A DNA stretch of 64,000 nt from Perna viridis (taxonomy: Eukaryota). The first letter of the stretch is position 1, and the number at the start of each line of letters is the position of its first letter. The stretch spans positions 23,357,171 to 23,421,170 of the forward strand of contig CM074511.1 in the NCBI GenBank assembly GCA_037379345.1, given 5' to 3'. Below the pieces are notes generated by a model, which saw nothing but the letters and a program-made list of their open reading frames with translations, was not told the DNA's origin and did no database searches. Of the stretch, positions 16,961 to 63,145 are shown piece by piece. The translations under genes were made by a program, and so were the position numbers.

Positions 16961-16985
16961 ATGGTAGTTCTGCCGTACCATATTA
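16961..16985 (+). CDS. Paralog A coding exon 1
   Basis: accATGG context, MVVLPYHI, phase-1 donor A|GTAAGT as in B and C. Confidence 0.75.
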
Positions 16986-19900
16986 GTAAGTAATATTTTC
17001 AAAATCATTTTCTCTTTTAGAAAAGATTTGACATATTTATACAGTTGTTATACATTGGTCTAAACTTTTTTGGATTAAAGTGCATCCGAATGCTTTTGAC
17101 AATTTTTGTTGACAAAAATACTTAAAACTACACTGAAGTAAAATTTTTAAATTGTAGACGTGGATCTATATTTATCAAACGCTGTACGAAACTTGAAGTT
17201 AAAAATAAACCTTTTGCAACTCAACAACTTGAAAACGAAAATCCATAAATTTAAGTGACGAATGCGTGTATATCATATTTAGTCATTTTTGTCAGATCTA
17301 ACACATTTTCCTGTTAAATTATCACTTATATAAATAAATAAACACATGCTATACGCTTATTACTAACAGAAACTTCCTATGAACCTGTTGCATAGTAAAT
17401 AATTTTGTATTGAAATTTTGAATTTATTTTTGAATAGATTTATTTTCCACAATGATGATGCTACTATGGATAATTAACCTGACTTGTTCAAGCAGGACGT
17501 GTCCTAAGGATTTATTTAGTGAAGTTTTCAGCTGTTTAAGAAATCTTACAAATGGAACAAATCAGAGTTCTTTAGTGTCTGGAATAGATACAGTATTGAT
17601 GAAGAGAAACTGCGGGTAAGTACCTAAACAATCTCCCTGTATGATTACAACCCTCTTCTTATATTAATTATTTTTGCAAGCCGCTCAGAATGTTCAGTGT
17701 TGTATTTATTTGTCATCATGTGAAAATTATATGCGGTTAGAAATTTTCTTTGTCTTAAATTATTACAATTTACTGTTTATAATAGACACAATATTCTTAT
17801 TGGTATACTAAGACACACAAATTAAAAGGATGTTCAATGAACGAATTTTCAAATGGCATGGTACTTTATTCTACGCAGAAATGGTGCTTTTGACGGTAGT
17901 GTCCAGTGCCTTAGAAAATTATATTCCCGTTATGAAGATCCAGTTTCTAGAGAATGGCTGCATAAATTAGCCAGACCAAGACGGTGGCAGTCAGGATTTG
18001 ACAGATTTTGTCAACATGTCAATTGTAAGTGTATGAAATTTGCATGAAAAAGAAAAAAAAGAGTTGAAAGCCTCCTGATTATTCTGATTATTGTGAAAAT
18101 TTACATTTTGAAAAATGTATATTTAGTCCTGGAGTTGATTTGGTTCTGCTACATGTATATATGATTTCGCTTACCGATAGGAGCATAATTATCAGAATCC
18201 GAAAGTTATGCTTTTTGATTTTTATTATCATAACTCTATGTGTTAAGGATTTTTGTAGTGTATTAACTCATAATTATTGTAACCCTGTCCGGAATCTGGT
18301 TGATTTACATGTATGATTATACTTCCTATACTTCATACAAATGTTTAACGTCAACAAGTTGTCAAATGGATAGATGATCATGGGCTATAATGGGTTTGTG
18401 ACGACTTGTACACTTGCTTTAAATATGTCATTTCGTAACACTCGTACTTGTTCGTCTAATACTACAAAATATTTTACAGTCAGCAGTACATTTACAAAAC
18501 GACCTGCGATTAAGTACAATAGTAACATGCAGGAGAAGTTGAAAGTTTTCCAAGAACTTTAGAACTTTGAATATTCAAATTGTACCCCATTTCCCCCTCC
18601 CAAAAATAAACAAAAGATAAAACAAATACCCAAAATACCAGAAAAGATTGTATAGGAAGTTTTTGAACATTGTACATGTAAATGTTATTTCTTTTAGATT
18701 ATATGAATGAAAGACAGTGTATTCAACAACAAAATACAAAGTTTGAAGCATGTGTGAGACTTAACAACGAAGATTTTGTAAATCCGAAACAGTTTATTTT
18801 ACACACAGGAGGAGGTTACACTGTAGATGAAGATACACTAAAGTCTATGTGCAGGTAAGAAAAATTGATTTTAAGAACATTACTTGTTTTAAATACAGTG
18901 AAACCTGTGTAAATCGGTACTTGGAAAAGTGAAATCTTGTCTTAACCAGACAATTTAGAAGTCCTTTAGTATAAGCTTAAGTATATTTCCAACCTGAACA
19001 AACCGGACACCTGTCTTAACAGATGAAATTTTACAGATTTCACTGTAATTTCATTTCATTTCAGAACCAGTTTAAAAACAAAAGGTCAAAAGACAAGCGT
19101 GTCGGGCGTACGCCTCTCTAAAATTTTGAGTTTAAACAAATTGTATAAAATGTTGATTTTATACAAATTTTACCCAAAACAGTTTGCATGTCTCGCTTGA
19201 CTCGGCATTCAATTCTATTAACGCCCAATATTAACCTGAAATCCTGGACCCGACACTGAACCCGCCCCCCCCTTTATAATCTGAAACTGAATCACTTTCA
19301 ACAAGAAAAGCGATAAAACGATATTTCATTACATAAAGTGTTCCTTACTAGAACAAGTTCTAGTTTTATAATTGGTTAAGAAAATAAAAGTCCTTGTCGT
19401 CTAATTCAATTTCCCACCGTCTCCATTATTTCAGAATGTTACCACATTAAGGTTTAGATGATTAAATTTCTTTTGGTCGTTGTCTGGTTTACTTCTTCCT
19501 AAAAAAACTTGGAATGAGTTCTGGTTAGAAACTATTAACCATTCTCCAACAGTGTATTAAATATTGCAAAAAAATGCTACATAATTTTTCGTAAGCCATT
19601 TATAACAGAAACGCCTCTAAAACATATGTCGCAACTGAACGTTCATATTCCTTTTAAGATATCATTTTTTACAAATTTAATCAAATCGTTTCCCGATTGG
19701 TAATGCATCAGTGTGGTATTTCTCTCAATAAAAAAACTCTTTCAATCATGTTAGGATATTAATAATCTCATTTTCTACATATTGAAATAAGTAAAAAAAT
19801 AATAAATGAAATTGCAATCTTACGGATAAGTCGACAGCTGTTTTAATGGTTTAGATTAAACTTGCTTACTCGGCTGCAGCCAATATGAGCCATCGAGCTA

Positions 19901-21209
19901 ATAATCCATGAAAACAATTTCCAGGATAATGTTAGTTGAAAATGATCATTTCTGTTTCAAGTATACGCTTTTCATAAAGCAAACTGAAGAAACGACCTCA
20001 TGGACTGAGTGAAATTACAGCGAATAATATAGTTAACTTCAGGGAATATCGTTAGTCTTCTCTTGATTGGCAAACACCTGATGAAACGGGAAGTAGATAG
20101 TTAACTGGACAATTGTCATGGAGATTTAAAAATTCTATCATTTAAGAAATATTATAATAAATTGTCCAGAAGAAAGTTCACGAGATGATTGTGATTAATC
20201 AAAAGAGTACCAACAAATTTCCCTGAAGTTAACTATATTAACTATATTACTCGCTGTAAGTGTTCACTATTAAAGGCGATAAAACAAAGAACAAAACCAT
20301 ATAAAATGCATCGCTTTGGCTCTCAAAAAGGAAAGCAGTTAATAGCCGCCCTTACACACTTGAAGATAGCGATCTCGAGGGGACTTTCTTTCGTACACTT
20401 TACCTATGGCTTTTTGAGATTTTATACTGACGAATTCTTAACATCACGGTTAAAGCAAAGAAAACAGTACAAAAGAGTTAACCATAAATTTGAAATTACA
20501 CTACATACAATGTTGACGTTCAGGGGATGTAGTTTGTTTTTCGTTGATTGAATTACTATCACATAATCAACTTCCTTACATATATAGTTAACTGGGCATT
20601 TAAACGAATTATACGTTCTATTAGACATAGATTCAAATACCTATGAGTCTGGTCTAGTTACTCACTTTAAAGAGGTTTATCAGGTGATGGACATTCAATC
20701 AAGGGAATATAAATTCTATCCCCTAAAGTTTACTGTTTTACTTGCAGTAAAACAAGTGAATGGACTACCCGATCTTCGACAAAAAAAAAGGGTACACAAG
20801 TAAAAGTAAGCATCTATAAGGAAACACCGGCTTGTCTTGTTATTGTTAACGAATGGTAAACATTTTTTTTTCTCTTCCGCTACTTTAACAAATGATTTTT
20901 CTTTGTCCCCCACTTTTGCAATGGGTATACTGTCTTTAATGTTATCAAATTGTTTTTTTTTTCAGTGTATTTGATCGAACCGATAAATGTTTAAGTGGTC
21001 CATTTAGGAATTCATGTGGTCGAGAAGTAGGCGCCATTTTGTTAGACTTTCATGGTGGAATTACTCCACCGATGTGCAGTAATTATTTATTTAGCTCAAA
21101 AGGACTTTCGATTCATCCGTCCAAGTTTCATGTGATAATATTTGCAATTTTTGCTGGAGTTTTGACACATACTATCACATGTGCTCATCGGTTGTGTTTT
21201 TGGAGTTAA
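16961..21209 (+). CDS. Paralog A: uncharacterised cysteine-rich cell-surface glycoprotein with signal peptide and C-terminal GPI-like/TM anchor, 249 aa, 5 coding exons
   Basis: Exons 16961-16985, 17438-17615, 17879-18024, 18698-18854, 20966-21209; all GT-AG, phases 1,2,1,2, 750 nt open. MVVLPYHINLFSTMMMLLWIINLTCSSRTCPKDLFSEVFSCLRNLTNGTNQSSLVSGIDTVLMKRNCGNGAFDGSVQCLRKLYSRYEDPVSREWLHKLARPRRWQSGFDRFCQHVNYYMNERQCIQQQNTKFEACVRLNNEDFVNPKQFILHTGGGYTVDEDTLKSMCSVFDRTDKCLSGPFRNSCGREVGAILLDFHGGITPPMCSNYLFSSKGLSIHPSKFHVIIFAIFAGVLTHTITCAHRLCFWS. Colinear with B and C. Confidence 0.9.
17438..17615 (+). CDS. Paralog A coding exon 2
   Basis: TAG| ... GG|GTAAGT; signal h-region and Cys1-3. Confidence 0.9.
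17879..18024 (+). CDS. Paralog A coding exon 3
   Basis: CAG| ... T|GTAAGT; 146 nt as in B and C. Confidence 0.92.
18698..18854 (+). CDS. Paralog A coding exon 4
   Basis: TAG| ... AG|GTAAGA; 157 nt as in B and C. Confidence 0.92.
18896..19045. mobile_element. Tc1/mariner-pogo-type MITE in intron 4 of paralog A
   Basis: TA|CAGTGAAACCTGTGTAAA ... TTTACAGATTTCACTG|TA. Confidence 0.75.
20018..20256. mobile_element. TA-flanked hairpin MITE family, copy 2 (intron 4 of A)
   Basis: TA|CAGCGAATAATATAGTTAACTTCAGGGAA ... TTCCCTGAAGTTAACTATATTA(ACTATATTA)CTCGCTG|TA. Confidence 0.85.
20966..21209 (+). CDS. Paralog A coding exon 5
   Basis: T-rich TTCAG| acceptor; SCGREVGA...GGITPPMC motif; TAA at 21207-21209. 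Confidence 0.92.
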
Positions 21210-30700: not shown

Positions 30701-31159
30701 CTGTTAAACGGTGCTTCTATAACTTATGCTAATGTATATGAATTTCTTCCTTAGCCTCGGTCCTCGACTGGTGTGATCGAGGTCATTGCTTACTTCTTTG
30801 CTTACTCAAATCAAATCGCTTCTTTAAAATTGGGCGCTGTTACTCATTCAAGTGGAAGACGCATGAGGGAAGCGACTTGAGTATCTTTACCGAAACAACA
30901 ACGCTACACCTAACCTATAAAGCATAAAATTGAATAACATTTAAGGGATACTTTAGAAAAATGTGAAACAGGTAACAGACACTATCTACATACACAATGT
31001 ACAAAAAATAATTACATGTAAAATACTGAAGATAAGACAGCACACAAATAATTAAGGCACTTTCAATATGCACATGCTTCGGACGGGTAAGCATTTCCGC
31101 TCCCGACGAGCAAAATCTAGTAAGTGTCAAGTTCGATGGGTTGTTAATACTGCAAAACG

Positions 31160-31335
31160 TGAAATCAAAAGAATATAGACCAAAGATAAAGACCAGACAG
31201 GAAAAATAGACACAAAGAACAAAGAACGTGAAATAACCAAAGAACACGTACAAAGAAACAAATGCAAATAAGCAACTCGAACTCCACCAAAAATTTGGAG
31301 CATTGCCAAGGTGCACCGGTAGGGTAAGTGTCCTA
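31160..31335 (-). mobile_element. 3'-region copy of the Penelope-like element family
   Basis: GAAATCAAAAGAAT...GCAACTCGAACTCCACCAAAAA...GGTGCACCGGTAGGGTAAG matches the reverse complement of 55850-56010. Confidence 0.8.
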
Positions 31336-34011
31336 TGTATTTTTTTAAACTTATTGAACATAACTTGTCTCGTTTAAGTGCCTAAAGTTAAGATGAACCC
31401 ATATCTATTTCACCTACCCAACAATTGAAATGCTAGTGTAGTAATATATATAATGGATATTTTTTGTATTTATTAGATATAAAACTCCAAAGCTTTTTTG
31501 TTCTTTGCAATTGGACTCAACCTTCAAATTTCCGGCCATAATAATGATCTAGTATTAAACTTATTCTTAGAAATCAATCGAAAGTTGATAGGATGTTAAT
31601 TAACGAACTAAGATATTTAATTGAGTTTATCAAGTGCAGATTACAGGCGATTATTAAAACAGTAAAGCTGGTAATTTTTAGAAACATGTAAACAGGAAGT
31701 ACACCTGTAGTTAAACAAATGAAACGCCATTGGTCTGTCGCTGAATTACAAAGGGAGACAATCGATGAATGCGGATTGTACTCAGTAACATAACATTGAA
31801 TGGTCTTTTTGAAGAAAAAAAAGAATGACTGAGCATTAATATTTGAGCAATCTAAACACGATAAAGACTTACAATGGATTGTAAAACGAAAATGCTAGTT
31901 TTGGGAAACCATACAACACGAGAATAATGATTCACATTAGAAAAAAGATAAATCTTCAGTTTATATTACTGTAACAGTAGAAAAAACTCTAACTCTAAAT
32001 ACTCTGACAAATATGAGGAAAATATATCTAATCAAAGTAATTTAAATCCATTTTAAGTATAAGAAACTTCCATTCCAAAGTGGATTGCGAATCGTTTGAA
32101 AGAGGTAGACGTCTGAATAGGTTTCCTTTCCCAAAGATCATCATTTTGGGTTTATATTAGTGCTATATGAGGAACCAATAATGTATGATTCTGTTAAAAA
32201 AAAGAGATATCTAGACTGATGTATTGGGTTTTTCCGAACACAATTTGAATTTGGAGATTAAATGACGTCAGAGTGAATATCCGCTCCTAGTAAGAAATGA
32301 CCATGACTGATGATGAAAATTCTAAATAATAACACAATCAACGTACCAACATTGTCGCCTTCAAACGGTCACTATTTGCATAAGTTGACATTTTCTTGTT
32401 TTATCTTTATTTATAATTGTCAGAAGAAATTGCTTCGAAAAACGGTAACCATGTAATCACCAGCAATTATTTGTGTGTTCTCTTTTTAATGTCATCATAG
32501 TCTGGGTGTCCTGTATGATTAAACCATCTTACATTACGATCTATAGGTTATCTAGGTGGCCGACATTGTCATTAGTTTGACCACGTTATTGTACCTTAAG
32601 GAAATTGAAGAAGAAAATGACAAAAAAAAACTGTTGTTTGATTTGGGTGTTATTATCAAGCCGCTATCAGAGTGAACTACATCCTACTCGTCATTACTTT
32701 TGTGTTCAGAATAGCATTTGACTCGAACGGTATACAAATTATTGCAAATTATTGCAAATCAAACGAATTCTTAATAAGTACCAGTCCACATAAAATTCAG
32801 ACACTGATAATAGTAGAGTGATTACTGAAGTAGAGAAAACCCATCGAACAAATTACGTTTTTTTTCAATCTACATATGCCTTATATTTCCATAACGATAT
32901 TCATTTCTGTTTTCAGATCTGCACTTTTGAGAAAATCATACATTTACCTCCCACTAAAATCAGCCAAATCAAACAAATCAAGAACGATAACTCTTGCAAA
33001 GTGCCAATTCCTTGTACAATCTATGTAATTTTTGCCTAAAAAGCGTAACCTCCAAATGAAAAACTAACATTGGTTATATGATCAGTAACTGTTACTGTAC
33101 AAGGAACAAAACTGAATTTGGTGGGTTTTTGACATGCATGAATCACCTCCTGTCTGATTTTTATAAAGACTGCTACTTAAAATGATGACTTTAGTATGGT
33201 CCTTTTTCTATTCCATACTACACTGAATCATTGCTAACCGAATCCTTCTTAGGCTTTTAGACAGGATTTTTCAGGGATCAGTTAGGACAGGTTTCAACAT
33301 ACATATTTACATTACTTGATGTTATTAATTCTTTTTTATACAAATTCACTGGTTTTTTTTCAGATTTTAAATGGCTGGTTTGAAGTTAAAGTTTCTTTCG
33401 GTTAACCCTAAGATAGCCTCACCTTCTTGTACCATAAAAAAATCCTGCCTACCCTTTCTATTAGTTTTTACGTTTGACCTTATTGCATCTTGTTATTATT
33501 TAGTTATTAATGATCAGTATATTATTTTGACACCAGTTTCCTCCACCTTGTTCTTATTTTAAGTACGCGTTTTATTTCCTGTCTTCTCTCAAGTCATATG
33601 TAAAATATCAGATGCTCGTTGTCAAAACTATTTCAGGAAAAACTTCAAAAAAGAACAAAAACGATTAATTATTATATAAAAATGTTATATTATTAGATTG
33701 TCTCTTTCAGAAGTCTTCTGATGTCAAATCCCATAAAACATTAACATGTAATGATATTACATTGTAAGCATTCTGTACGGAGCATTTGATGCAATGATTG
33801 ATATCAATCAATGTTCCTGTCCTCAGCGATTTCTTTGCCAGTATCATTATGAAACATAATTTTACAATTAACAACATGTCTTGCTTGCTATCGTTTCTTC
33901 TCTACAAGCAAATTGAATTATAATTATCAGCTCTTACTAATAGACCACAACCGGTTCTGCCAATTTTGTCCTCGATTAAACCCCCTTGTTCAAATTATAC
34001 GTCTCGTATTA

Positions 34012-34687: not shown

Positions 34688-34984
34688 TGAAAACTTGCCC
34701 GTTTGTTCACCATAGTCATAGTTTTCCTTTCCTCTTTCGGTGACCCCGGACATAATATTTTATGAGCAATTGGGTGGGTTTTCTAAATAAAAAAGTAGAA
34801 GACTCTTCCCTACCGCTGCACCGAGTCCACACTTTCAGTTTTTAGTGGAGTTCGCGTTGTTCATTTACTTTTGTTTCTTTGAACGTGTTGCTTTGGTTAA
34901 TGTTTTGTTGCGTGTGTTTGTTTTCTCTGTGTAGTATTTATCATTAGATTATCGCTCGAATCTAATTCCCCTTAATTATTCTTG
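34688..34984 (+). mobile_element. Diverged 3' end of the Penelope-like element family
   Basis: ATGAAAACT...GTCATAGTTTTCCTTTCCTC...CCCTACCGCTGCACC...TTTTAGTGGAGTTCGCGTTG, colinear with 55737-56040. Confidence 0.75.
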
Positions 34985-37900: not shown

Positions 37901-38084
37901 AAATGTAAAGAGATCCATCAGAGGATTTTTCCATAACAGTAGGCAAATTATGACTGAAGTAAACATAAAGAGAACAAGAGAGTGGACGTGTAGTCATACA
38001 GACAAAGTACGAATAAACAGAAATGCACTTGTATCATATCAATACAAACCCAACTGAATATTTATAGGCTCAAAATTTAGATGG

Positions 38085-44998: not shown

Positions 44999-45041
44999 AT
45001 GGTGTCATCGTGGACCATGGTAGTGTGGGAATGCCAAATCA
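44999..45041 (+). CDS. Paralog B coding exon 1
   Basis: In-frame ATGs at 44999 and 45017; phase-1 donor A|GTAAGT. Confidence 0.75.
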
Positions 45042-48000: not shown

Positions 48001-51000
48001 TGTTAATTGCCCAGTTGACTACCAAAGGAATTCATCAAGTGATTATTCCTTAAAGTTATTACTTGCTGTTATAGCTGATTTTCGTTTAAAAGATATCTTT
48101 TAAAAGATTTATATAAACTATTCGTAACCTGTAATAAAAAATTCTGTTTCGGAAAATCAATTGTTTTTCATAAACATATTGGTTGTTGTTTCACAAGTGT
48201 ATATTTGGATTAAACACTGATATATAAATAAATGCTGTTAACAAAAATATTTTGTCATAGATATAACCATGATGGTCTTACTTTGGTTAATCAACCTGAC
48301 CTGCTCCGGCCATACATGCCCAAAGAACTTACTGAGTGAGGTATTTAGTTGTTTAAAGAATTTGACACACGGAAGCAACCAGAGCGCACTTCTATCAGAT
48401 GTAGATGCCGAGTTGATGCGGAAAAACTGTCGGTAAGTTAAACAGTTAATATATTTATATAGTATGGAAAATATTATGGGGAGGGATAGACTTTTTTAAA
48501 ATGCAATTTTAAATTAGATTTGAAAACATGTGTATCATAATTCGTATGTTACATTTCATATCAATATTAATTAAATCTGTCTTTTTAATATTTTGAATTG
48601 CGGATTTATTAAAGTTTTCATACATGTTGTACATTTTGTTCAACGCTTGTTTGCCCATTTTGACATACGAAATTAACATAAACTTGAAATATACATGTTA
48701 CAAAAGAAAACGTATTATGAATGAAAATATAGCATTCCTGAACATTTTCCATTGATTGATTTACATTTATGCAGCACTGGTGCATTCAGTGACAGCGTAC
48801 AATGTCTTGAAAGATTATATAAACATTGCGATAGCCCGGAAGCCAAGGAATGGCTTTATAAGCTGGCAAGACCAAGACGTTGGCAATCTGGATTTGACCG
48901 ATTTTGTGAACATGTGAAATGTAAGTTATATAAAAAAAAAGAAAGACTGTAGGTTTTTCATGTCATTTCAAAACATCTCATTATATTTGTAAAAAAAAAC
49001 GGGTTTTACCCATTAACAGAAAAAAATGGTTAGCACAAAATCATAGATGGCATTTCGCTAAAAATAACCGTGTTTAGTAGCAGAATGGCTTTTAAACGTT
49101 GTAAGAACATTGTAATATTAAATTATGATGTCATTAATCTTTCAATTGAAGCTCAATTGAGCTCTACCAGAACGTGAAAAAGATGTTCTCAGTAGGAAAT
49201 ATTGACCTCTTTACTTCAACTTATAATTATCTAGTCAAATATGTACCATTTAATTCCCAATCATGTAACTTAGAACACCCATCCCAAATAAGGATTATGT
49301 TGTCCTGTACATTAGCGAATTAATTGGCAATTATTTCTAGCTTATCGGAAAATCTAAACTTGTTCCAATTATCACAAAAACATTTATTTTCAGTATATAC
49401 TAACCAAAACCGTTGTATTCAGGAGCAAAACATGCAAATAGAAGAATGTGTCAACAAAAATAAGGAACAATTTGAAAACTCCAATAGATATATTTATCAT
49501 ACGAAAGAAGGGTATCAAGTAGATGAAAATGTTGTCAGATCAACATGCAGGTAAATATGTCGTCTGATCAAACCGTCGTCAGATCTACATGCAGGTAAAT
49601 ATGTCGTCTGATCTACTTGTCGTCCGATCTACATGCGGGTAAATATGTCGTTTGATCTACTTGTCGTCCGATCTACATGCAGAAAAAATATGTCGTTTAA
49701 TCTACATGTCGTCCGATCTACATGCAGGTAAATATGTCCTCTGATCTATATGTCTTCAGATTTACAATAGTTAAATATGACTGACGTGAGATTTGTACTG
49801 CTCAAAGTCAAAAGACGTTTAGATAAAGTACTTGCATATTTAATAAGACATTGAAGCAGCATAAAATTATTCTATTTTACCTGATTAGTTCGTTGAATTG
49901 AGAATGCGAATAAAATTGAAATAAAAAATGAATAGAAGTAAACATTCAAAAAACGGAATAGACAACGACAAAACATATATGCAGACAGACGTCCAGTTAT
50001 GAGCCAATCATCTTGAATCAGCTACTTTTTGTGATCATTCAGTAAAATATTACCATCGAAGTCAGATCCATTTACTACATAAAGGACGGATAATATATAC
50101 CAGATGAAAAATAATACATGTTGTGAAGAGGCTAAATTAAGCCTGAATGAAAAATAATAAATATGTGAACAACAGCCACTTTTAAAAGGTAAAAGGGAAC
50201 TAAATACAAATAAAATGCATTGCAATACAGAAAGTGAGGCCCAAATGGGCGGCCTTACGGCCTTCGTCAGGGGCAAAAATTCTAAAAGTGAAAACTCAGT
50301 CTGAGTCGACAGTGTGTCTGTGTCAGTCTTCACTTTTAGAATTTTTTACCCCTGACGAAGGCCGTAAGACTGAATATTTGAGCTTCACTTACTTAACAAA
50401 GTCGAAAACAGAGAATCTAAATATTTTTTTCTGTACGAATATTATTACTCGTTCGATTAGATGAATAAACTAGAGCGTAAATTTCAAGATATATTCTAGA
50501 ATTTACATGAACTAAGATCGCAAAAATTCTGCGAAGGACGATAACATTAAAAAATACAAAAATACCAATCGTATATATTGCAAATTTCGATATGCTGTTC
50601 TCGTGTTCCAAGGAGTAACCTCTCATCAGAAGCACTAGAATCAAATACATAGGAAGATATAAATTCAAAACTTTATTGTGTACAAAAAGTACTCAAAACC
50701 AAAACTACCAAAATAGAAAGCTTAATCCATAACCGAAGGGTTCTAATATGTGCAACGCAAGGAATGAAGCCTTAGTGTTTTAGGTATTTTGAAATTTGTA
50801 ATCATCAAATATTTCGGTGCAATGAAATATTTTTTCTTGACAGTAATTAGTTAAACACAGCTAATTATCAAGTACTGTATATTTTAAAGGGTTTTCCTAG
50901 CAAAAGTATACAGCGAAACTTGGTAAATAAAAGGTGATTGGTTTTAGTTTTATCGTTTTGAAATAGCTGATGCTCAAAAAGCTACAAGCATTTCGACAAT

Positions 51001-51348
51001 CATGGGAGTTGTGTAGGGAACAACATGTAAAAATGGCAATAACGCATAATTGACAATATAAACACCAATATCATTTGTACAAATGTATCCAAATTTAAGT
51101 ATTAGTGAAGTAATTCAATTCCAAATTTCATTTACAGTGTATTTCATTGGACTGAAAAATGTTTGAGTGGACCTTTAAGAACTTCATGTGGCCGTGAAGT
51201 TGGAGCAGTTTTGGCAGACTTTCAAGGAGGAATAACTCCGCCTATGTGTAAAAATTATACTTCATCGGCTCTGTCGTATCATACGCAGAAATATGGAGTG
51301 ATGACATTGACTATTTTGATATATTTATTTAACCTGTGTCAGCGATGA
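44999..51348 (+). CDS. Paralog B: uncharacterised cysteine-rich, probably GPI-anchored glycoprotein, 242 aa (236 aa from ATG 45017), 5 coding exons
   Basis: Exons 44999-45041, 48261-48432, 48775-48920, 49394-49550, 51138-51348; GT-AG, phases 1,2,1,2. MVSSWTMVVWECQINITMMVLLWLINLTCSGHTCPKNLLSEVFSCLKNLTHGSNQSALLSDVDAELMRKNCRTGAFSDSVQCLERLYKHCDSPEAKEWLYKLARPRRWQSGFDRFCEHVKLYTNQNRCIQEQNMQIEECVNKNKEQFENSNRYIYHTKEGYQVDENVVRSTCSVFHWTEKCLSGPLRTSCGREVGAVLADFQGGITPPMCKNYTSSALSYHTQKYGVMTLTILIYLFNLCQR. Confidence 0.9.
47924..48068. mobile_element. TA-flanked hairpin MITE family, copy 5 (internally deleted, intron 1 of B)
   Basis: TA|CAGCGAGTAATATACTCAACTTCAG ... TTATTACTTGCTG. Confidence 0.7.
48261..48432 (+). 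CDS. Paralog B coding exon 2
   Basis: TAG| ... CG|GTAAGT; 172 nt. Confidence 0.92.
48775..48920 (+). CDS. Paralog B coding exon 3
   Basis: CAG| ... T|GTAAGT; 146 nt. Confidence 0.92.
49394..49550 (+). CDS. Paralog B coding exon 4
   Basis: CAG| ... AG|GTAAAT; 157 nt. Confidence 0.92.
49531..49781 (+). repeat. 44-bp tandem repeat spanning the exon 4/intron 4 junction of paralog B, about 5.5 copies
   Basis: Unit GTCGTCMGATCTACATGCAGGTAAATATGTCGTCTGATCTACTT, built from a 16+16+12 substructure. Confidence 0.95.
50232..50390. mobile_element. Inverted repeat carrying two degenerate minimal hammerhead ribozyme motifs (Penelope pLTR-like remnant)
   Basis: Arms 50254-50296 and 50325-50368 are near-perfect reverse complements; each reads outward CCCCTGACGAAGGCCGTAAG. 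Confidence 0.65.
51138..51348 (+). CDS. Paralog B coding exon 5
   Basis: TTTACAG| acceptor; TGA at 51346-51348. Confidence 0.92.
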
Positions 51349-54023
51349 GATATTCGTTAGTACTAAGGTAATGTCTCAAGCTTAAGGTTTCATTTGAGAA
51401 TTCCTAAATAGTCATGTGCCATAAAAAATGGACGGTAATAGCTATCCACTGATCTCAAATAAGTGATTCATCAACATAGAGGATGTCAATGTGGTTTTAT
51501 TGATACAGAAGTCTAGCGGCCCACCTGATTATTTGTGTACATATGCTTTCGATTTCAATATTATTGAGTAAAAAATCAGATTATGACTGTGTTACTCTAA
51601 AGCATGTGCCATTTAATGAACTGAGACAAAAATAAAAATATTAGTATATGTCATATTCAACATTATAGGATATACTATTTTACCGACCATTCGTAATAAC
51701 TCCCTTTTGAGATCAACAATACCGGATAATTTGCATTACACGTACAATTAATAACTATATGTTACATATCTGGTACCAATACTAGTACTTACGTATAACC
51801 TAAAAGAAGTTTCTTTTTAACGAAGCTCTTCAGAACCATAAACCGCATATGCAGGGCAAGGCTAGTGATCTAACGTATGTTTAACAGGTGAAAAGGATAC
51901 ATATATATTTTTTACATGACAAAAACTTTTGTGATGATAATTGGACGAGTGATTCACATCATTTAGTCATGTTTTGTATGCGAGAAAAAGATGTTCAATT
52001 GAATATTTGCCATTCAATGGCTTGTTTTGAGTGTTTGAGCAGATTTGATGTTCATGATATACAAACGTTTACACCACTTTGATGACCCAGAATCAATCCA
52101 GTCTCTTATACACGTGTACTGCATACCCTTTTGTTACAAGCAGTTGCCAAATTTTGGCGAAGTGCTGTAATATTGTTTCTCCATTTATTCTAAGATAGTA
52201 ATTTGTATTTCAAGTATAGAATTAATAGGATTTGCAATTTTGCCTAGAGATTTGAAGGGTTTTAAGAACTTTTATCAAAGTACTGTGCATAAGAACCCTA
52301 ATGCAAATGTTCTTTTTGATAAAAACACCCTTCAAAAGCGACATTGGCTATTGAAAATCTTTTCCGAAGATAACGTTTTAGATTGAACAGTTTGAAACTC
52401 ATACCTTGAAGCCAGCTTCTTACATAATTATTAGTAATCAGGGAGACTGACTTTGCTTAAAATATCTGAATTAATTTTACATAATATTATATGATTAAAA
52501 GGTTTTATGCGCTACTGTAATTATCAAAGAAAATTACAGTGTCTTGCGTCAATTTATTCTTAATTTCAGAACTGATTAAAGAAATTACTTCCCAGATATT
52601 TAACAACAGACAATAAATGTGAGTTCGGGTGTTTTTAATTCATCCCTGTTTTGTTTTTGTATCAATTGCTATATGTATTATATTTTATTTGAATTCGAAT
52701 TAGAAATAATGATGATTAAATCATAGTAGAAGTTAACATTTATATGAAAATACCAAAATAATTCAAAAATAATGTAAGGTGTAAGAGACTGGATTGGAAT
52801 ATATATCTAATGTTGTTGTTCGCTTGTAGTGTGTGTATTTACGTATATTTTTACGTAGAACAGTTTCTACCAACCAATGACAAGTTTAACTCATTAATTC
52901 AACATTTAATTATAAATATTTAAATTAAAACATCACGACCTTTTAACATATGCCAGGCATTCGGCTTAGTTGCTTTGGTTTCTCGTTTCCCTTGTAAAGG
53001 CAACAGTTTTTAAAAATTAAGAAATTTTGGCATAACATTTTGAATATTTCATGAAGAGGTTTATCCTTTTACTCAAGGGTATATATAACTTGTACTGAAA
53101 TATCATATGTAGAAACTGGTAATGAAAATGTATTTGTAATTTGAATGCACTTCGGAAAGAACGTTTATCGTTAATGCTTTCATGAACGTTCTTTTGATGA
53201 TTGGCTTCTGGCTATAAAAGTGAAAAGTAAGAATTTTCATCCAAAGACTAAGAAAATGAATGAATTTGTACAAAGTTTATGAAATAGAATGATATTGTTT
53301 TTATTTTGTGAATGAAACTACTCTAGTAAAAAAAGTCATCATTGTCATCTGCATATCAAGCCATTCGTTTCTTGTTTAAAAAAACAAACATGCTGAAATG
53401 TGTGATATATATTACGTGTAAGTTTATATAAGAATCCGGCAAAATGGAACATCCAGAAACATGCATTTAAAAAAAACAACCGATCTGACAATTTAATTTC
53501 ACTCAATGATGCATTCTCTATCTGAAAAGACTATTATTTGATCTGAGCATCATTGGATTTGCTCAGACATTTTTTTTAAACGAACGTTAGAAAAATGAGG
53601 TTTTTTTTGGAAGAGTTAACTGCCCTTGAAATGTTATTTTTGGTGCATTTCAGTGGAATCATCACTCAATTTCCCAAATTGATTTGGAAAATCTTGTCTC
53701 TATTTCATGATTCTCATGGTACAAGTAGTCAAATTAAACTTTCAAAGGGAAGTTTTTTTTATACCATGTTTCACCTACTGCCTGATTCTTACAGAGACTG
53801 ATACTTAATAATTTGGTGGTCATGCACAGACGGGAGAGAAGAGTTTCGATGATATTTCACAATAATGTATAAGTTGTAGATATTGTAAATTGTATTTATG
53901 TTTGTTGAAATTGATTTGGATGAAGATAATGAGGATATTGTAGTGTTGAGACAATGCTTGATCTATCACTATTGAAAACGTAATTGTTTTTATAAGTATC
54001 GATATAAAAAATATGTTTTGTTA

Positions 54024-54230
54024 AAGAGTAATCAAGGGAACAAAGATTCTAGCAGGAATCAAAAGTTTGTAATCCAGGAACAAAGACCAGACATGGAAAA
54101 CAGACAAACACAACAAAGAACATAAAGTAACTAAAATAATACATACAAAGTAACAAAAGTAAATGAGCAACTCGGACTTCACTAAAAACTGTAAGCATGG
54201 ACCAGGTGCACCGGTACGTTAAGCGTCTTA
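54024..54230 (-). mobile_element. 3' end of the Penelope-like element family
   Basis: AAGAGTAATCAAGGGAAC...GCATGGACCAGGTGCACCGGTA. Confidence 0.85.
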
Positions 54231-55651
54231 ATAACTGCTCGCATCAAACTGTGACCTATTAACTCTCCCAATCAAATGTATTTCAGATATGAACACCATT
54301 TAAAAGCATTATTTGTACTAATGTCTTGCACTCAACATCAAAAGATAAACAAATAATTCAAAATTCGGTTTGGGTAACTTTACACCAAACGAAACCAATC
54401 GCCGTTTAAGATGGTGGTTATCTAGATTTTTATATCAGAATTTAAACGAGGACATCGTGATAAACATTCTCTGCTTTTCTAGAAGCACCCATTTATGATA
54501 TCGGATCTGGATGGAAACGAAAGAATTGGGAACAAATCTGAAATTGTAATATCTACAGAAATGGAAATACATTTAGTGTGGTCATTCAATATACCTATAA
54601 CTCTAAGAAATTCTTAAAAAATATCATCTTCAAATATTCAAAAGGATATATTATCAATATATACGTAATATACCTGAATGTGGACATAATCATGGTAGTA
54701 GTGATCGTGTACGTGTGTGCGCGCGCGTTTGTACGTGTGTTTTTTTAGTCTGCTTGCTAAGAAATCAGTAAAATGATTAGTAGTATGCAAATCAATTTTG
54801 CAATTTTTGTAAGGCATCTGGTATTTGCCTTGGGTGGTGCAAATGATAATATGTGAAAATGGTAAGAAAAAATATTTAGATTATGTGAATGTTATTTGAA
54901 ATTATGAATTATATTTATTGTCAGTTATTTTATTGAATAAAAGCATTGTTTTGTATAAGAAGTGTTTTCTTTCTTGCATAATTCCAGACACAACATATAG
55001 ACAAGAAAGCAACGTTTTTTATACTTTGAACAACTGATCTGTTGTTCCTTTAAGAATTGCAATTAAATCATTGACACAGTATGTAATACTCTATTTAACA
55101 TAACCTTGACAGAAGAAAAAAAAATGTTCGATTGTTATTTTTCAAACTAATCAAACTTCTTGCTAGGAAGAAATTCTTACTGAGAACCATTCAATTTATT
55201 TGTTGCATTTGAGGCAGGTGTAACCTGTAAATGGACTGAGTTGAATATATAAATATATTTCCTAGACTTCTTGACGGTTCTTGTCACTTCCTGACGCTAC
55301 TTGACACCTCTTGTCGCTAATATGTGAGACCGGTACTTCAAACTTTCTGACTTAAGCCAAAAAGGCTCTTATGGCATGTTGGAAACGAAAAAAGTATCTG
55401 AACTCAAATAATTATTGAAGTTCGTATAATAAACGCTTTTTAGTAAAAAAACATACGAAAATATCGAACTTTATAAGGGAAGTTCGAAAGGCGCAGCTTA
55501 CTCTCAGATTGAAATCAGACTGTCAGTGCGTCCAAGCTATGCCTTTATTTTACAATACTTACTGTTATGAAGACTTAGTCCTTTATCATGTATTTCTTCA
55601 CGAATACGTACCATCGTTCAATTATTTAAGTTGAATATCTTTCACAGACTT

Positions 55652-56040
55652 CTTACAATTAGGCTACTAGAGCAGGTTTTTGTTGCTACAAGATTGAAGT
55701 CATCACTACCGTCGTTACGGTGTATCTATCTGCACCATGAAAACTAATTTGTTCAATGTGTCATACTTTTCCTTTCCTCTTTCTTCTACCCCAGACTTGA
55801 CTTTCTATGAGCAACTCGGCAAGTGTTTCTAGAAAAGCAAAGGACACATACCCTACCGGCGCACCTGGTCCATGCTCCCAGGTTTTAGTGGAGTCCGAGT
55901 TGCTCATTTACTTTTGTTACTGTGTATGTATTATTTTATTTATTATATGTTCTTTGTTGTGTTTGTCTGTTTTCCATATCTAGTCTTTCTCCCATTCTTT
56001 TCATTTCCGCTAGAATCTTGGTTCCGTTGATTACTCTTTC
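55652..56040 (+). mobile_element. 3' portion of the Penelope-like element: RT C-terminus plus complete 3' UTR
   Basis: CTTACAATTAGG...GCTACAAGATT...TCGTTACGGTGTATC...CACCATGAAAACT matches 1110-1270 (with an internal deletion) and runs on to TGATTACTCTT, the shared 3' terminus. Confidence 0.85.
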
Positions 56041-56904
56041 ATGTGACTATGAATTATCAATTATTTTTCTCATGTCTGTCTTTTCCATATAATACCATTT
56101 ATTTCCTGTGGTTTCCAATAATTATCATTTGTTTGTTTCTTTATACTTACCCCATGATATACGAAACCCTTCTCGTGAAAATAAAGATGGTCATATATTC
56201 GTATTCGTCTGTATACAATTACTAGTAATACAGTTTACTTGAAATCGAAGTCAGGCTTAAATTTGGTATTTCAGTATTTATATTGTATGGTATCAAATCT
56301 TCGTCTCCTAGGCAACCAGTCCAATATTTCAGAGATTATTGCCAACCCTGACATCTCTTGTTTGCTAACGTGATTCAGCGGCCACTTTTAAGGATTTCTC
56401 TCAGATGAACAATCATTATAAAACTAGAAACGGTCCTTATAAACAGCTTGAGCAGGTGCGCGTAGCTTTTAACAACTGTAATATTGGATATTAATTGACA
56501 AGTACAACGTTTGATCAAATAAAATGTTTAAAGATTTTTCTTAGAAAACAGAATCAATGTCTTTAACATGATCTGATACGTTTGGAACTAAAATCTTGTA
56601 TCACTTATTCAAACATCATAGTCATGCACTGATCTGTCAGGTGAACTACTAGATAATGTCACACGATCTTTACGTCAATTGTGATCCATTGCTTATGAGT
56701 AGAAAGTCATGCAAAACAAAGTAAAATAATAAAAATCAAATCTGTATATAATTTTTATTTCAATATTTTTGTGAAAGATTTCATTTCTGAGAAAAGCGAC
56801 ATGACATAATCATGATATGAGCAATTCTATATGGTTAATATCTGTAAAATGAAATAACAGCTGTTACAAGCCTGTTATTTGTTTCAAGTTAAATGTATAT
56901 TTTA

Positions 56905-58947: not shown

Positions 58948-59155
58948 TTATTGCAGAAGCTGTACTATAAAACTAATCGATGTCGTCACTAATATCGCAA
59001 TGAAAGTTGATACGTGTGAAGTAACTGCCGAAGTAATATAATTTGCACATATAGGGGGAGTTAACCCCCCTTCAAAGTCAGCTAACACTGCTCCCACTTC
59101 TTTACCACATGAAGTCTTTAATGATTTAAGGCATGTATTTGACCAATGAAATAAA
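58948..59155 (-). CDS. Paralog C coding exon 5
   Basis: TTTTTCAG| acceptor; TAA stop at 58950-58948. Confidence 0.92.
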
Positions 59156-62100
59156 CTGAAAAACAAATAAAGAGAAAAATAAATATCACTGTTTCTGTTT
59201 AGATTGTACCAAAAATGTATTTCAAATCACTAATCAATTACAAAATATATTTGCGATATTATATTTTTATTATCCTTACTAAAAAAAAATGACCTCACTT
59301 TCAAAAACATTCCGAAAATTTAGACTTATTCTAAAATTATCAGTTCTTCAAGAATTGCAATGGACTTAAAATTTAGTACATTGCAATCATTTCTTAAAAA
59401 AAACCGATTATTTTTGTTTGTCAATAGTTTGTTTTCTTGCTTGTATAGTTGTTTCACGATGAATCTCCCGATACCCTGCGAATAAGTTCTTTGACACCTA
59501 TGTAATCCCTCGGTGATTAACATGCCTCATTGTGTGTACTACTAATGTACTAATACAGTTAGATGTTCTATTATATTTCTCACACCTTGTTGAATTTTTG
59601 TTCAAGATTATTTCAGACAAGTGATACATAGTATAACATCAGAGTGGTAATTAAGTCTGCAAAGGAGAAAGTATAACAACAAAGAAAATTCATGACGAAA
59701 CTAATACATACCTGCACATTGCTCTCATAACATTCTCATCAACATGATACCCATCTCTGGTGCGGACGGTATATTTTGGAGTATTTTTGAACTGTTCGTG
59801 GTTTCTTTTAACACAGGCATCAACTTGTGCATTTTGTTTATCTATACAGACCTTTTGACTGGCATACACTGTAAAAATGAATATATTTCAATTTTTCATT
59901 TTCGGGACCTTCAGAAGTTTGTGACATGAATGAATGGCTTCAACGATTTTTTCCTCAAAGTTTGCCTTAAAACAATGATATTCAGTCGTGTATTTTCAGT
60001 CATACTGTTGTGGTATTTATTATTTATTATTTGGTAATATAGTAATAGTATCTTATTACCTGTATGTGTGCTATGTGAAAGGAGAAGGTTCGGTTATGGC
60101 CAATTTTGGCCTCAAAATTTGAATTTGTATCGTTTTTGTACACATAAGTATTTACACCAGCTAGTTCGATAAGATTTAGGTCAAAACAGAAAAGCATCTC
60201 GACATTGTAGCACCAACAAAATTGTCTAAATGATGAAAATCCAAAAAATCTCAATATTTCGGCATATTTTTGATGATTTTTGTGGAAAACAAATGTTGCC
60301 GCGTGCGTGTTCATTCTCGATTATTATATATATTGTGTAGTATTATAAAAAATTGTAAGATACAACATACATGTCAATATTTTGGATAAACGCGGATGCG
60401 GCCATTTCCGTTTTAGGCAAAAACCATCGAAAAATATGTGCAAAAATGCAACAAAATTGAAGATTTCGCTAATGTTGTGTTAATTGTGACCGCTATTAGG
60501 TCAAAAACATTCATGATATGAGATGTATTTACTACAACCATTATCCTTTCAAATAAACCAACCAGTATAGACCAAAACAAATCTTCCCAATACGTTGAAT
60601 ACTGGGGGCCAAAATAGAGCCTTACCTAATCTGCTCCTTTATCGTTTATAAAAACAATTATCAAACGAATACATAGACAATAAAAAAGTTACCATGATAG
60701 ATAACTTTCACATTCACTTTCATTCCGGAAAAGTTTTTTTTCAATTATATCGAGGTCAAAAGGCGTAAGATCGGATGACATTGCAATGGATGCCAATTAA
60801 GGGAACAGAAACTGGATTCGATCACTACCAGGAATTTTAAATGATACATATATAATAGAACCATTTCAGATATGGCGTATTTTCACTATTACTGTTCTTG
60901 CAGCCTTCAAATGCGACATCCTTTCTCCGTTTAGTATAAAACCGTTAACCAGTTTCCACCAGATTCGACGTAAACGGCGGATCTGAAAGTCATCTATTGA
61001 ACACTTCAGATTATACTTACAATTAACGTGCTGACAAAATCTGTCAAAACCAGATTGCCATCGTACTGGTCTAGCTATTTTTTGTAGCCATTCAATTGCT
61101 TCTGGATCAACACAGCTGTCGTATATTCTACGAAGGCACTGTACACTATCATCGAATGCGCCAGTCCTTTTTAATAAGACATACGATTATTACGATCCTT
61201 TTAGAGTTGAGCATGTTTTCAATTGTAAATTGAATTCATTTTATTTAAATTGTGTCTACTTAGATATATATACATTCCCAACTAATTGATTCTTATTGAT
61301 TCATATTGATTTAAATGATATCGTAACAAGGCAATTACGGTTTGGTACTTCGAAATGATGATACCTATTCAAACTTACCTACAGTTCTTCTTCATAATTT
61401 CAACATTGGTTGCTGATACTAGGGGTGTACCTTTACTTTGCTGCGTGAGGTTCAGGAGACAACTCAATGTTTCCTGCAGTAAATCTTTTGGGCATGTTTG
61501 ACCAGAACATGTCAAGTTAATTAACCAGAGTAAGATCATCATGGTTACATCTGAAGAAATAGAAATTCCAATTAGTTTGCGAAATGATAAGTGACGTATA
61601 TGTAACTACGAAATGATAGATGATGTAAATATTTTGTTATATAATAGTTTATCCGTCTGTTGCACATTTCTACCTTCTATCACTTCAAGTGATTCAGCTT
61701 CTCAATATTCATATTCAGTGGCGGATTCGGGGAAGGTATTGAAGGAGTTGGACCCCCACCCCTATAAAGTGAAATGGTCAATCCTTAACTTGACATATCA
61801 AGTTAAACACATCCATACAAGTACACCTTCAAGAAAGAAGCATTGTTATATGTATATGACTTGTCTTATGGTTATGGCAAGCCATTGTGGAATTTGTTCC
61901 CCATTTACTGATGTCAGCAGATAAGTAACATATGTTAATGGATATTTACCAACATATGCATAATTCAACTGTTGATATCAATAAATGGAGGAGTTCTCTA
62001 GAAAATGCATACACATTAAAGACAAAACGTATGTATGTTCAAATTTGCTCTTCGGGCAATACCAGTCTGCGTCTATACTTGTCCCTCGGGCAATGCCAGT

Positions 62101-63145
62101 CTGTGTCCAAACTAGTTCATTTAGATTAAAATATACGTTTTTGTATATGTGTATATGTATTATAAGTGCTTGTTTAAACCCTATATCTTTTACCGTATAT
62201 CACAACCCTAATTGGAACACACTAGAAGTATAGTAAGAATATCTTAAATAACGAACGTGACAGGTCAAGACGTATCAAGCCTCGACTCATTTCACTCCTC
62301 TTGCCGGAACCTTGGGTGATACACATGTATAGGAGACTCGGGTTGATATGGCATATGAAGCAGGTTTTGGCATTAAATATTTATTATATGCTAAACAAAT
62401 TTCTGACCTTGCATATGCTTCTTCAAGTTATTGTTTACTTTTTGTCTAGACAAAAATAAACATACAGCAATACACAAAAGCTGATGTTTGTGTGTTTGTG
62501 TGTTTGTGTGTTTGTTTTTTAATATATAAACCCCAGTAAACTATGAAGACATTTTAAATAAAACGGTTAACTTAAATCTAAAACATTAAAAACAGTTTAC
62601 ATAAAGAACAGGTGATAAATAGGAATAGAATCATCAATTCCATAGATTTGATATCTTCATATCTAAAATCTTCTCCCATTATATAATCAGCAGACAGTAA
62701 TAAATAAAGTCAACCAGCGATATTTCACGCTAAGAATAGTTGAAAGATTCTGTAATGCAAGATATGATCAAGAATGCTTCGCACGAATTTCCAACTATGA
62801 CTCTAATTATCATAAATACAAATTTAAGAATATTTGTAAAAGAACGAGTATTTCCGTTGAAGTGCATGTGTAGGCATTAGATTGCAGCTTAATATGGTTT
62901 TATGATCATATTTTTCATTACCACATGTAGAAGTGTGCCATAAATAGCACACAGATAAAAATAAAGAATTTTTACACGCATATTAGAATGAATTTTAGGT
63001 ATAGGTAATTAGTAAGCTGATAAATTCTAAATACGAAATCATAATCCGGAATGTTAGTTGTTTTAATTAATGTGCTATAAGAAAAACAAAAAATGCACTT
63101 ACTTATTTGACATGACCAGGTTAGCATGTTTTCAAAAGATACCAT
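58948..63145 (-). CDS. Paralog C: uncharacterised cysteine-rich, probably GPI-anchored glycoprotein, 241 aa (235 aa from ATG 63127), 5 coding exons
   Basis: Exons 63145-63103, 61550-61379, 61166-61021, 59868-59712, 59155-58948; GT-AG, phases 1,2,1,2. MVSFENMLTWSCQINVTMMILLWLINLTCSGQTCPKDLLQETLSCLLNLTQQSKGTPLVSATNVEIMKKNCRTGAFDDSVQCLRRIYDSCVDPEAIEWLQKIARPVRWQSGFDRFCQHVNLYASQKVCIDKQNAQVDACVKRNHEQFKNTPKYTVRTRDGYHVDENVMRAMCSLFHWSNTCLKSLKTSCGKEVGAVLADFEGGLTPPICANYITSAVTSHVSTFIAILVTTSISFIVQLLQ. Confidence 0.9.
59712..59868 (-). CDS. Paralog C coding exon 4
   Basis: TTTTTACAG| ... AG|GTATGT; 157 nt. Confidence 0.92.
60080..60638. mobile_element. Non-autonomous DNA transposon of about 560 bp with TIRs, in intron 3 of paralog C
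   Basis: AGGAGAAGGTTCGGTTATGGCCAATTTTGGCC ... GGCCAAAATAGAGCCTTACCTAATCTGCTCCT; degenerate TTAA-like flanks (TGAA, TTAT). Confidence 0.7.
61021..61166 (-). CDS. Paralog C coding exon 3
   Basis: AAG| ... T|GTAAGT; 146 nt. Confidence 0.9.
61379..61550 (-). CDS. Paralog C coding exon 2
   Basis: TTCAG| ... AG|GTAAGT; 172 nt. Confidence 0.92.
63103..63145 (-). CDS. Paralog C coding exon 1
   Basis: In-frame ATGs at 63145 and 63127; phase-1 donor A|GTAAGT. Confidence 0.75.

What the first reader, a model, noticed from the sequence alone, without database searches (positions are those of the whole stretch)
16961..63145. Hidden three-gene family of uncharacterised twin six-Cys-domain, GPI-type cell-surface proteins
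Seen: three intact five-exon genes (A +, B +, C -) with identical intron phases, conserved exon lengths, and introns I cannot align. Each encodes a signal peptide, 12 conserved cysteines (11 in A), a conserved N-glycosylation sequon (NLT after Cys2) and a hydrophobic C-terminus. Preserved reading frames and many synonymous differences imply purifying selection. I recognise no named gene. Inference: Cys spacing, amphipathic segments and the SCG motif recall helical disulfide-rich families (DUF19/T20D4.11-like, CPG4, insect 27-kDa haemolymph DUF1397; possibly neuritin/RGM-N-like folds). This would be a lineage-expanded surface receptor, co-receptor or adhesion family of unknown ligand.
Basis: partly seen in the sequence, partly recalled or inferred. 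Interest (0 to 1): 0.8.

Follow-up and report, generated by a model that had tools for sequence, protein, structure and literature searches.

The report
Mussel GPI-type 12-cysteine surface protein genes
Three real, expressed mussel genes encode small cysteine-rich proteins that are probably tethered to the cell surface by a lipid (GPI) anchor. They belong to an unstudied bivalve branch of the invertebrate DUF19/DUF1397 protein group, so they are ordinary new members of a function-unknown family, not a new kind of molecule.

Summary
Genes A (+, 16961-21209), B (+, 44999-51348) and C (-, 63145-58948) each have five GT-AG exons, intron phases 1,2,1,2 and identical inner exon lengths (146 and 157 nt). 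They encode 249, 242 and 241 aa.

RNA contigs from four studies splice B exactly as modelled. Spliced mRNAs of another mytilid carry one-to-one orthologues of A, B and C, with dN/dS of 0.12-0.19.

Each protein has a signal peptide, an NLT sequon and 12 family-invariant cysteines; the A lineage has 11. Each ends in a Ser/Ala-rich stretch, a spacer and a hydrophobic tail, which is a GPI-type signal.

Relatives were found only in pteriomorph bivalves (mussels, scallops, oysters, pearl oyster), all labelled "uncharacterized". Pfam DUF19 and DUF1397 match the orthologues at or just under threshold. Neuritin (NRN1) and CPG4 do not match. The AlphaFold model is all-helical and no solved structure matches it.

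The triplication arose within mussels. The scan met this superfamily before on other DNA: s1-765235 describes two distant paralogues 7.1 Mb away. I confirmed they are kin, so this genome has five such genes, not three.

The receptor or adhesion role remains untested. Interest is modest.

The parts
16961..16985 (+). Gene A exon 1 (start codon, first 8 codons + 1 nt)
   Evidence: donor GT, phase 1. The same N-terminus lies in frame upstream in the A-type orthologue mRNA L008.
17438..17615 (+). Gene A exon 2 (signal peptide core, Cys1-Cys3, NLT sequon)
   Evidence: Gap-free across the junctions against the mRNA-derived orthologue P0032.
17879..18024 (+). Gene A exon 3 (Cys4, Tyr in place of Cys5, Cys6)
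18698..18854 (+). Gene A exon 4 (Cys7-Cys9)
20966..21209 (+). Gene A exon 5, coding part with stop (Cys10-Cys12, C-terminal GPI-type signal)
44999..45041 (+). Gene B exon 1, coding part
   Evidence: The loose letters before 48261 in an RNA contig (X2) are the last 30 bases of this exon.
48261..48432 (+). Gene B exon 2
   Evidence: contigs of 4 runs lie on 48261-48431 and join to 48774/5 (GT..AG).
48775..48920 (+). Gene B exon 3
   Evidence: joint 48920 to 49394 in 4 runs.
49394..49550 (+). Gene B exon 4
   Evidence: joint 49547(+3) to 51135(+3) in 4 runs.
51138..51348 (+). Gene B exon 5, coding part with stop. The 3' UTR runs on beyond 52399.
   Evidence: contigs are continuous from 51135 to 52399 or further.
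63103..63145 (-). Gene C exon 1, coding part
   Evidence: N-terminus is collinear with the orthologue P0001.
61379..61550 (-). Gene C exon 2
61021..61166 (-). Gene C exon 3
59712..59868 (-). Gene C exon 4
58948..59155 (-). Gene C exon 5, coding part with stop

Best explanation
A, B and C are three functional paralogues produced by a triplication within the mussel lineage. They belong to a small protein family found so far only in pteriomorph bivalves, which is itself a divergent branch of the invertebrate DUF19/DUF1397 group of secreted 12-cysteine proteins.

Shown here: the genes are transcribed and spliced as modelled, and they are under strong purifying selection. The 12 cysteines, the NLT sequon and two motifs (W..GF.R.C, and CG....A.L.DF..G..PP.C) are conserved across the 23 family members examined.

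Inferred route: the N-terminal signal peptide, probably cleaved after the conserved C-S-G, takes the protein into the ER. Six disulfides lock an all-helical bundle of about 180 residues, and the sequon after Cys2 is glycosylated. The C-terminal signal is exchanged for a GPI anchor. That signal consists of small Ser/Ala residues 5-12 residues after Cys12, a polar spacer of about 8 residues, and 13-20 hydrophobic residues that end the protein. The bundle then sits on the outer face of the plasma membrane.

The protein has no catalytic signature. Its most likely job is therefore to bind something (a ligand, a partner receptor or a matrix component), with the conserved motifs as the likely contact surface. 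It could also be shed by cleavage of the anchor.

The A lineage has kept an odd number of cysteines (11) since before the two mussel genera split. This suggests a free thiol or a changed pairing, and some divergence of function.
For: - Gene models.
- RNA: contigs of four runs from four studies join 48432|48775, 48920|49394 and 49550|51138, and one carries exon 1 letters in front of 48261.
- Orthologue mRNAs L007-L010 and L012 are intronless and collinear, with no gaps at any junction. Mytilus coruscus has the same exon boundaries.
- Selection: dN/dS is 0.115, 0.122 and 0.189 against the orthologues at dS of about 1.3, and about 0.16-0.17 for the paralogue pairs where dS could be computed, at saturated synonymous sites.
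- Cysteines: 11 are present in 23/23 members and Cys5 in 21/23.
- A GPI-type tail is present in all 23 members despite poor sequence conservation.
- Pfam: DUF19 matches 10/20 orthologues, best 23.3 bits against a cut-off of 23.2. DUF1397 matches 6/20, best 24.4 against 25.7. Both map to the same part of the protein.
- Atlas: the nearest feature neighbours are arthropod clusters, including DUF1397 at 0.91.
- AlphaFold model: all-helical, core pLDDT about 85.
- Tree: the mussel clade has 98/98 support, with A, B and C each paired with an orthologue.
Against: - No GPI or signal-peptide predictor could be run. The anchor is inferred by inspection only.
- The hydrophobic tail of A is followed by 14 more residues, which is less typical of a GPI signal.
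- No ligand, tissue or phenotype is known for this family, or for DUF19 or DUF1397. Literature: more than 80 C. elegans DUF19 genes show no RNAi phenotype (PMC8410859).
- Expression in this species was shown only for B. A and C rest on orthologue transcripts.
- The window's own exons give no Pfam hit when searched singly.
- Only one orthologue reaches a Pfam cut-off, and by 0.1 bit.
Confidence: 0.7

Rival explanations
1. Same proteins, but not GPI-anchored. The C-terminal hydrophobic stretch would be a single-pass membrane anchor with almost no cytoplasmic tail, or the proteins would be simply secreted, as the insect 27-kDa haemolymph proteins (DUF1397) and nematode DUF19 proteins are described.
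For: A has 14 residues after its most hydrophobic 13-residue window, and some orthologues end with basic residues. Named relatives are known as soluble secreted proteins (PMC3534327; haemolymph proteomes found).
Against: In most of the 23 members the hydrophobic end is only 13-20 residues long and finishes within 2-14 residues of the C-terminus. It is preceded by a Ser/Ala/Gly-rich stretch at a fixed distance from Cys12. That is the classic GPI signal and is short for a membrane helix. '27 kDa glycoprotein-like' proteins also turn up in insect gut plasma-membrane proteomes (PMC12858984).
Confidence: 0.2
2. The proteins are invertebrate counterparts of vertebrate neuritin (or of the RGM N-terminal domain), duplicated in tandem, and act as GPI-anchored growth or guidance signals.
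For: Both are GPI-type and helical. Each half has six cysteines, with a spacing that I recall as similar to neuritin (from memory, not tested). Neuritin clusters appear among the Atlas look-alikes at 0.75-0.76.
Against: The Pfam NRN1 profile matches none of 20 family members at E<=1 and nothing in this genome. Atlas scores under 0.9 are leads only. No RGM, neuritin or GFR-alpha structure appears among the fold matches. The two halves are not significantly similar to each other.
Confidence: 0.08
3. The loci are decaying or non-functional duplicates, or mis-joined open frames that do not make protein.
For: None beyond the lack of direct RNA evidence for A and C in this species.
Against: All 12 introns are GT-AG and the frames are intact. 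dN/dS is 0.12-0.19 for every paralogue. B is spliced in RNA contigs of four studies. All three types are expressed as mRNA in another mussel.
Confidence: 0.02

Closest known systems
Pfam DUF19 (PF01579; nematode 'T20D4.11-like' secreted cysteine-rich proteins)
   Same: Signal peptide and about 12 conserved cysteines in roughly 140-160 residues, with no known activity. The profile aligns to residues 34-195 of a mussel orthologue and reaches the cut-off in one scallop orthologue. UniRef names the Mizuhopecten orthologue 'DUF19 domain-containing protein'.
   Different: Most members score well below the cut-off, and the window's exons give no hit when searched singly. The bivalve proteins carry a GPI-type tail and a conserved five-exon structure. 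DUF19 is a large nematode expansion (51 to more than 80 genes: PMC3534327, PMC8410859), whereas this is a family of 1-3 genes.
Pfam DUF1397 (PF07165; insect 27-kDa haemolymph glycoprotein family)
   Same: Similar size and all-helical prediction. Sub-threshold but significant matches occur in 6/20 orthologues, best E 2.2e-5. An Atlas DUF1397 cluster scores 0.91. Glycoprotein-like members are found in insect gut membrane proteomes (PMC12858984).
   Different: No member reaches the cut-off (24.4 against 25.7 bits). The match covers only the region from Cys6 to Cys11. The insect proteins are described as soluble haemolymph, peritrophic or venom components.
Distant paralogue pair on the same chromosome (earlier finding s1-765235)
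   Same: Same exon layout, with introns right after Cys3 and Cys9, and the same cysteine pattern. The family HMM hits its exon-2-like piece at E 2.6e-6, with collinear weaker hits to the other exons.
   Different: Only about 24-37% identity in exon 2. The SCG/DF..G..PP motifs are not kept. The pair lies 7.1 Mb away.
Neuritin (NRN1, PF15056)
   Same: Small, helical, six cysteines, GPI-anchored.
   Different: No profile match. It has a single six-cysteine module and is a vertebrate family. The resemblance is a lead from memory plus weak Atlas scores only.

Membership tests
DUF19 (PF01579) | Match to the Pfam profile at or above the gathering score (23.2 bits) | tested here: inconclusive
   Window exons searched singly give no hit. 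Among the orthologues, P0005 scores 23.3 bits, P0016 22.9, P0032 15.7 and P0001 13.6; 10 of 20 match at E<=1. The joined A/B/C proteins were not scanned.
DUF19 (PF01579) | About 12 conserved cysteines in one extracellular module behind a signal peptide | tested here: met
   Twelve cysteine columns: 11 are invariant in 23/23 members and one is present in 21/23. A hydrophobic N-terminus is conserved.
DUF1397 (PF07165) | Match to the Pfam profile at or above the gathering score (25.7 bits) | tested here: not met
   The best is 24.4 bits (E 2.2e-5) in P0030. Six of 20 match at E<=1, always on profile positions of about 127-194.
Neuritin (PF15056 NRN1) | Match to the NRN1 profile | tested here: not met
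   No member of A4 matches at E<=1. There is no match in the whole genome at E<=10.
CPG4 (PF15481) | Match to the CPG4 profile | tested here: not met
   CPG4 is not among the families matched by any of 20 members at E<=1.
GPI-anchored proteins | N-terminal signal peptide, plus a C-terminal signal of small omega-site residues, a polar spacer and a terminal hydrophobic stretch without a cytoplasmic tail | tested here: met
   Tested by inspection and hydropathy only: all 23 members fit. No dedicated predictor was available.
GPI-anchored proteins | Release from the membrane by PI-PLC, or lipid anchor seen on the mature protein | not testable with these tools
   This needs an experiment.

The most novel reading that the evidence does not exclude
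The bivalve genes are the membrane-anchored, low-copy, slowly evolving representatives of one ancient protostome superfamily (possibly bilaterian, if neuritin belongs). That superfamily would also include nematode DUF19, insect DUF1397 and many unnamed arthropod proteins. Being single to triple copy and GPI-anchored, they would offer the first tractable handle on what this large orphan superfamily binds, for example as a surface co-receptor.
Probability: 0.15. Interest if true: 0.55.

Novelty: new member of a known kind. Interest (0 to 1): 0.3.

Why it matters
The finding gives exact, RNA-supported models for three mussel genes and places them in a family. It shows that an orphan family of probable GPI-anchored proteins has been kept under strong constraint across mussels, scallops and oysters. 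It also links that family to two large invertebrate 'domains of unknown function' that have no solved structure and no known ligand. That helps annotation and could help anyone trying to work out what DUF19/DUF1397 proteins do. It reveals no new mechanism.

Tried and rejected
- Pfam on single exons of A and B found nothing.
- The profile of the family against PDB sequences gave only insignificant hits, best E 0.086, to the cytochrome bc1 hinge protein.
- Foldseek against PDB had a best E of 0.4. VIA-align against 48,161 chains had a best Z of 5.6, all generic helical bundles. No known fold can be named.
- An internal-duplication test by hhalign of half 1 against half 2 was not significant with 3 sequences (E 0.089, probability under 1%) or with 23 sequences (E 0.32). 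The alignment does put Cys1-5 on Cys7-11.
- Pfam DUF19, DUF1397 and NRN1 profiles run on the whole genome exon by exon hit nothing at these loci.
- Two word-index protein searches with family alignments gave no relative outside bivalves, even at E<=10.
- A search of papers for the orthologues' LOC numbers found none.
- I first fetched the wrong side of the earlier finding's position and found nothing there. The right region was found afterwards.
- The joined (spliced) A, B and C proteins were built only inside scripts. They were not sent to Pfam, HMMER, Atlas or structure tools. Those searches used exon references or full-length orthologues with database ids.
Full report
What is there

The window is AT-rich animal DNA (GC about 31%). 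Earlier notes of this scan call the genome a mussel, and my closest named hit is Mytilus coruscus.

I compared every stop-to-stop reading frame of the window with every other. This finds four blocks of protein similarity repeated at three loci. E-values run from 1e-14 to 5e-27. Between the blocks there is no similarity apart from dispersed repeats.

Reading the splice sites gives three five-exon genes:
- A (+) 16961-21209
- B (+) 44999-51348
- C (-) 63145-58948

All 12 introns are GT-AG, and intron phases are 1,2,1,2 in each gene. Exons 3 and 4 are 146 and 157 nt in all three. The products are 249, 242 and 241 aa.

Are the genes real?

Many runs that are probably RNA, from several studies, hold 16-27% of the sampled words of the B locus, about the share its exons and UTRs make up.

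I laid the contigs of four such runs, from four studies, on 46500-52399. They join 48432|48775, 48920|49394 and 49550|51138, exactly as modelled. One contig carries the last 30 bases of exon 1 in front of 48261. The 3' UTR runs on for more than 1.2 kb.

However, spliced mRNA contigs from another mytilid (loci L007-L010) encode proteins that pair one-to-one with A (P0032, 74-78% identity), B (P0029, 75-80%) and C (P0001, 63-64%). These are collinear, without a gap, across every predicted junction, including exon 1/2. The Mytilus coruscus gene has the same exon boundaries.

Against these orthologues, dS is about 1.3 for all three pairs. dN/dS is 0.115 for A, 0.122 for B and 0.189 for C. Between the paralogues, synonymous sites are saturated.

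The genes are therefore functional and old.

The protein

An alignment of A, B and C with 20 relatives shows these features:
- A conserved hydrophobic N-terminus ending in C-S-G, which looks like a signal peptide.
- Twelve cysteine columns: 11 are invariant in 23/23 members and Cys5 is present in 21/23.
- An invariant L-T (NLT in nearly all members) two residues after Cys2.
- Two conserved motifs: W..GF.R.C before Cys6, and CG....A.L.DF..G..PP.C from Cys11 to Cys12.
- A poorly conserved tail with constant architecture after Cys12. It has a Ser/Ala/Gly-rich stretch, a spacer of about 8 residues, and 13-20 hydrophobic residues finishing within 2-14 residues of the end.

That tail is the textbook GPI-attachment signal (established knowledge of GPI signals). 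I could not run a predictor, so this is inference by inspection.

The A lineage (A and its orthologue) has Tyr instead of Cys5. This leaves 11 cysteines, and the change is fixed since before the two genera split.

AlphaFold2 on the B orthologue with the 20-sequence alignment gives an all-helical model. Mean pLDDT is 71, pTM is 0.62, and residues 60-215 have pLDDT of about 85. There is one small hairpin.

The 'twin six-Cys' idea

The two halves have parallel cysteine spacing: C-x10-C-x25/32-C-x8/10-C-x7/8-C-x19/25-C. In both halves a phase-2 intron falls directly after the third cysteine, and a phase-1 intron separates the halves.

This suggests an internal duplication. However, profile-profile comparison of the halves is not significant (E 0.32). 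I rate the idea as plausible, not shown.

Relatives

I ran a profile of exon 3 from the three genes against 1.84 billion representative proteins with HMMER. It gave 12 hits at E<=0.001, of which the first eight are family members; P0009 and P0012 are clearly repetitive low-complexity sequences, and P0010 and P0011 were not examined.

Two word-index searches with full-length family alignments added about a dozen more.

All named hits are pteriomorph bivalves: Pecten, Ylistrum, Argopecten, Mizuhopecten, Crassostrea, Ostrea, Pinctada and Mytilus. All are 'uncharacterized' or 'hypothetical', except that UniRef calls the Mizuhopecten protein 'DUF19 domain-containing'. No paper mentions their locus numbers.

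In the tree the mussel sequences form one clade (98/98). Inside it, A, B and C each sit with an orthologue, with support 100/100, 83/86 and 99/99. The triplication therefore happened within the mussel lineage, after it separated from scallops and oysters and before the two mussel genera split.

Family placement

Single exons give no Pfam hit. Full-length orthologues do:
- DUF19 (PF01579) matches 10 of 20. The best is 23.3 bits against a cut-off of 23.2 (E 6e-5).
- DUF1397 (PF07165) matches 6 of 20. The best is 24.4 bits against 25.7 (E 2e-5).

Both always map to the same stretch, from Cys6 to Cys11. NRN1 (neuritin) and CPG4 match nothing.

The protein-language-model atlas puts unnamed arthropod clusters (0.94-0.95) and a DUF1397 cluster (0.91) nearest. 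Neuritin scores only 0.76.

No solved structure resembles the model beyond generic helical bundles. The best Foldseek E is 0.4 and the best VIA Z is 5.6. The PDB sequence profile search is also empty.

The family is thus a divergent, unclassified bivalve branch of the DUF19/DUF1397 group. Little is known of either named family:
- DUF19 has 51 to more than 80 secreted C. elegans genes. Some are induced by infection or stress, none has an RNAi phenotype, and overexpression of one stunts growth (PMC3534327, PMC8410859).
- DUF1397 covers the 27-kDa haemolymph glycoproteins, which are also seen in gut membrane proteomes (PMC12858984).

More copies in this genome

Exon-level searches with B's exons 3 and 5 find only A, B and C.

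The scan had already recorded a 'tandem pair of double 6-Cys, GPI-type' genes 7.1 Mb upstream. Its follow-up also filed these under DUF19/DUF1397 (s1-765235).

I fetched that region. My family HMM hits its exon-2-like piece at E 2.6e-6, with collinear weaker hits to the exon 3-, 4- and 5-like pieces. The intron positions and cysteine pattern are the same.

A profile of exon 2 from all five genes finds exactly these five in the 723-Mb genome. So the 'three-gene family' is one subfamily of a five-gene set on one chromosome.

How it most likely works

Shown: transcription, splicing, constraint, and conserved cysteines and motifs.

Inferred: ER entry, six disulfides locking a helical bundle, one N-glycan, exchange of the C-terminal peptide for a GPI anchor, and display on the outer membrane leaflet.

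There are no catalytic motifs. The conserved surface motifs point to a binding role, possibly with shedding of the ectodomain. What it binds is unknown.

I put about 0.85 on the identity and placement, about 0.7 on the GPI anchor, and no more than 0.4 on a receptor or co-receptor role.

Verdict

The novelty is low: these are new members of a function-unknown family that is already present in databases, and the same scan had already met the superfamily in this genome.

Procedure note

The joined A, B and C proteins were handled only inside scripts. All database, family, atlas and structure searches used exon references or orthologues with ids.

Noticed in passing
window:49530-49766: A 44-bp tandem array (5.4 copies) starts inside exon 4 of B and repeats its splice donor. 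The spliced RNA contigs of all four runs use only the first donor, at 49550. One low-depth unspliced contig (49524-49778) runs through the array. Contigs drop rare variants, so occasional use of the other donors is not excluded.
   Followed up: partly
window:47620-47845: A dispersed repeat of about 230 bp lies in intron 1 of B. It has at least 1252 first-look candidates across all chromosomes at 79-92% identity. It explains the very high contig depth there in the RNA runs.
   Followed up: partly
window:25630-25936, 30918-31381, 34722-34944, 38042-38449, 40647-40884, 53976-54243, 55689-56089: A second interspersed repeat family, in both orientations, shows up as translated similarity between these stretches. 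It is not part of the genes.
   Followed up: no
window:17923-17925 (gene A codon 82) and the orthologue P0032: The A-type lineage has Tyr where all other family members have Cys5. This leaves an odd number (11) of ectodomain cysteines in both mussel species. It could mean a free thiol or an intermolecular disulfide.
   Followed up: partly
G000:C1:16193900-16224300 (-), loci L019-L022: Two distant paralogues have the same exon layout and cysteine pattern. They correspond to earlier finding s1-765235 and are the only other genes in the genome found with the five-gene exon-2 profile.
   Followed up: yes
window:50232-50390: Another first-stage note proposes hammerhead ribozymes here. No Rfam family, hammerheads included, reaches its gathering score anywhere in the window. 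I did not run the more permissive E-value scan.
   Followed up: partly
window:24592-24774: A 45-bp tandem repeat with 4.1 copies at 94% match lies between genes A and B.
   Followed up: no
window:51638: In the 3' UTR of B, all four RNA-type runs read G where the assembly has A. This is probably an allele or an assembly difference.
   Followed up: no
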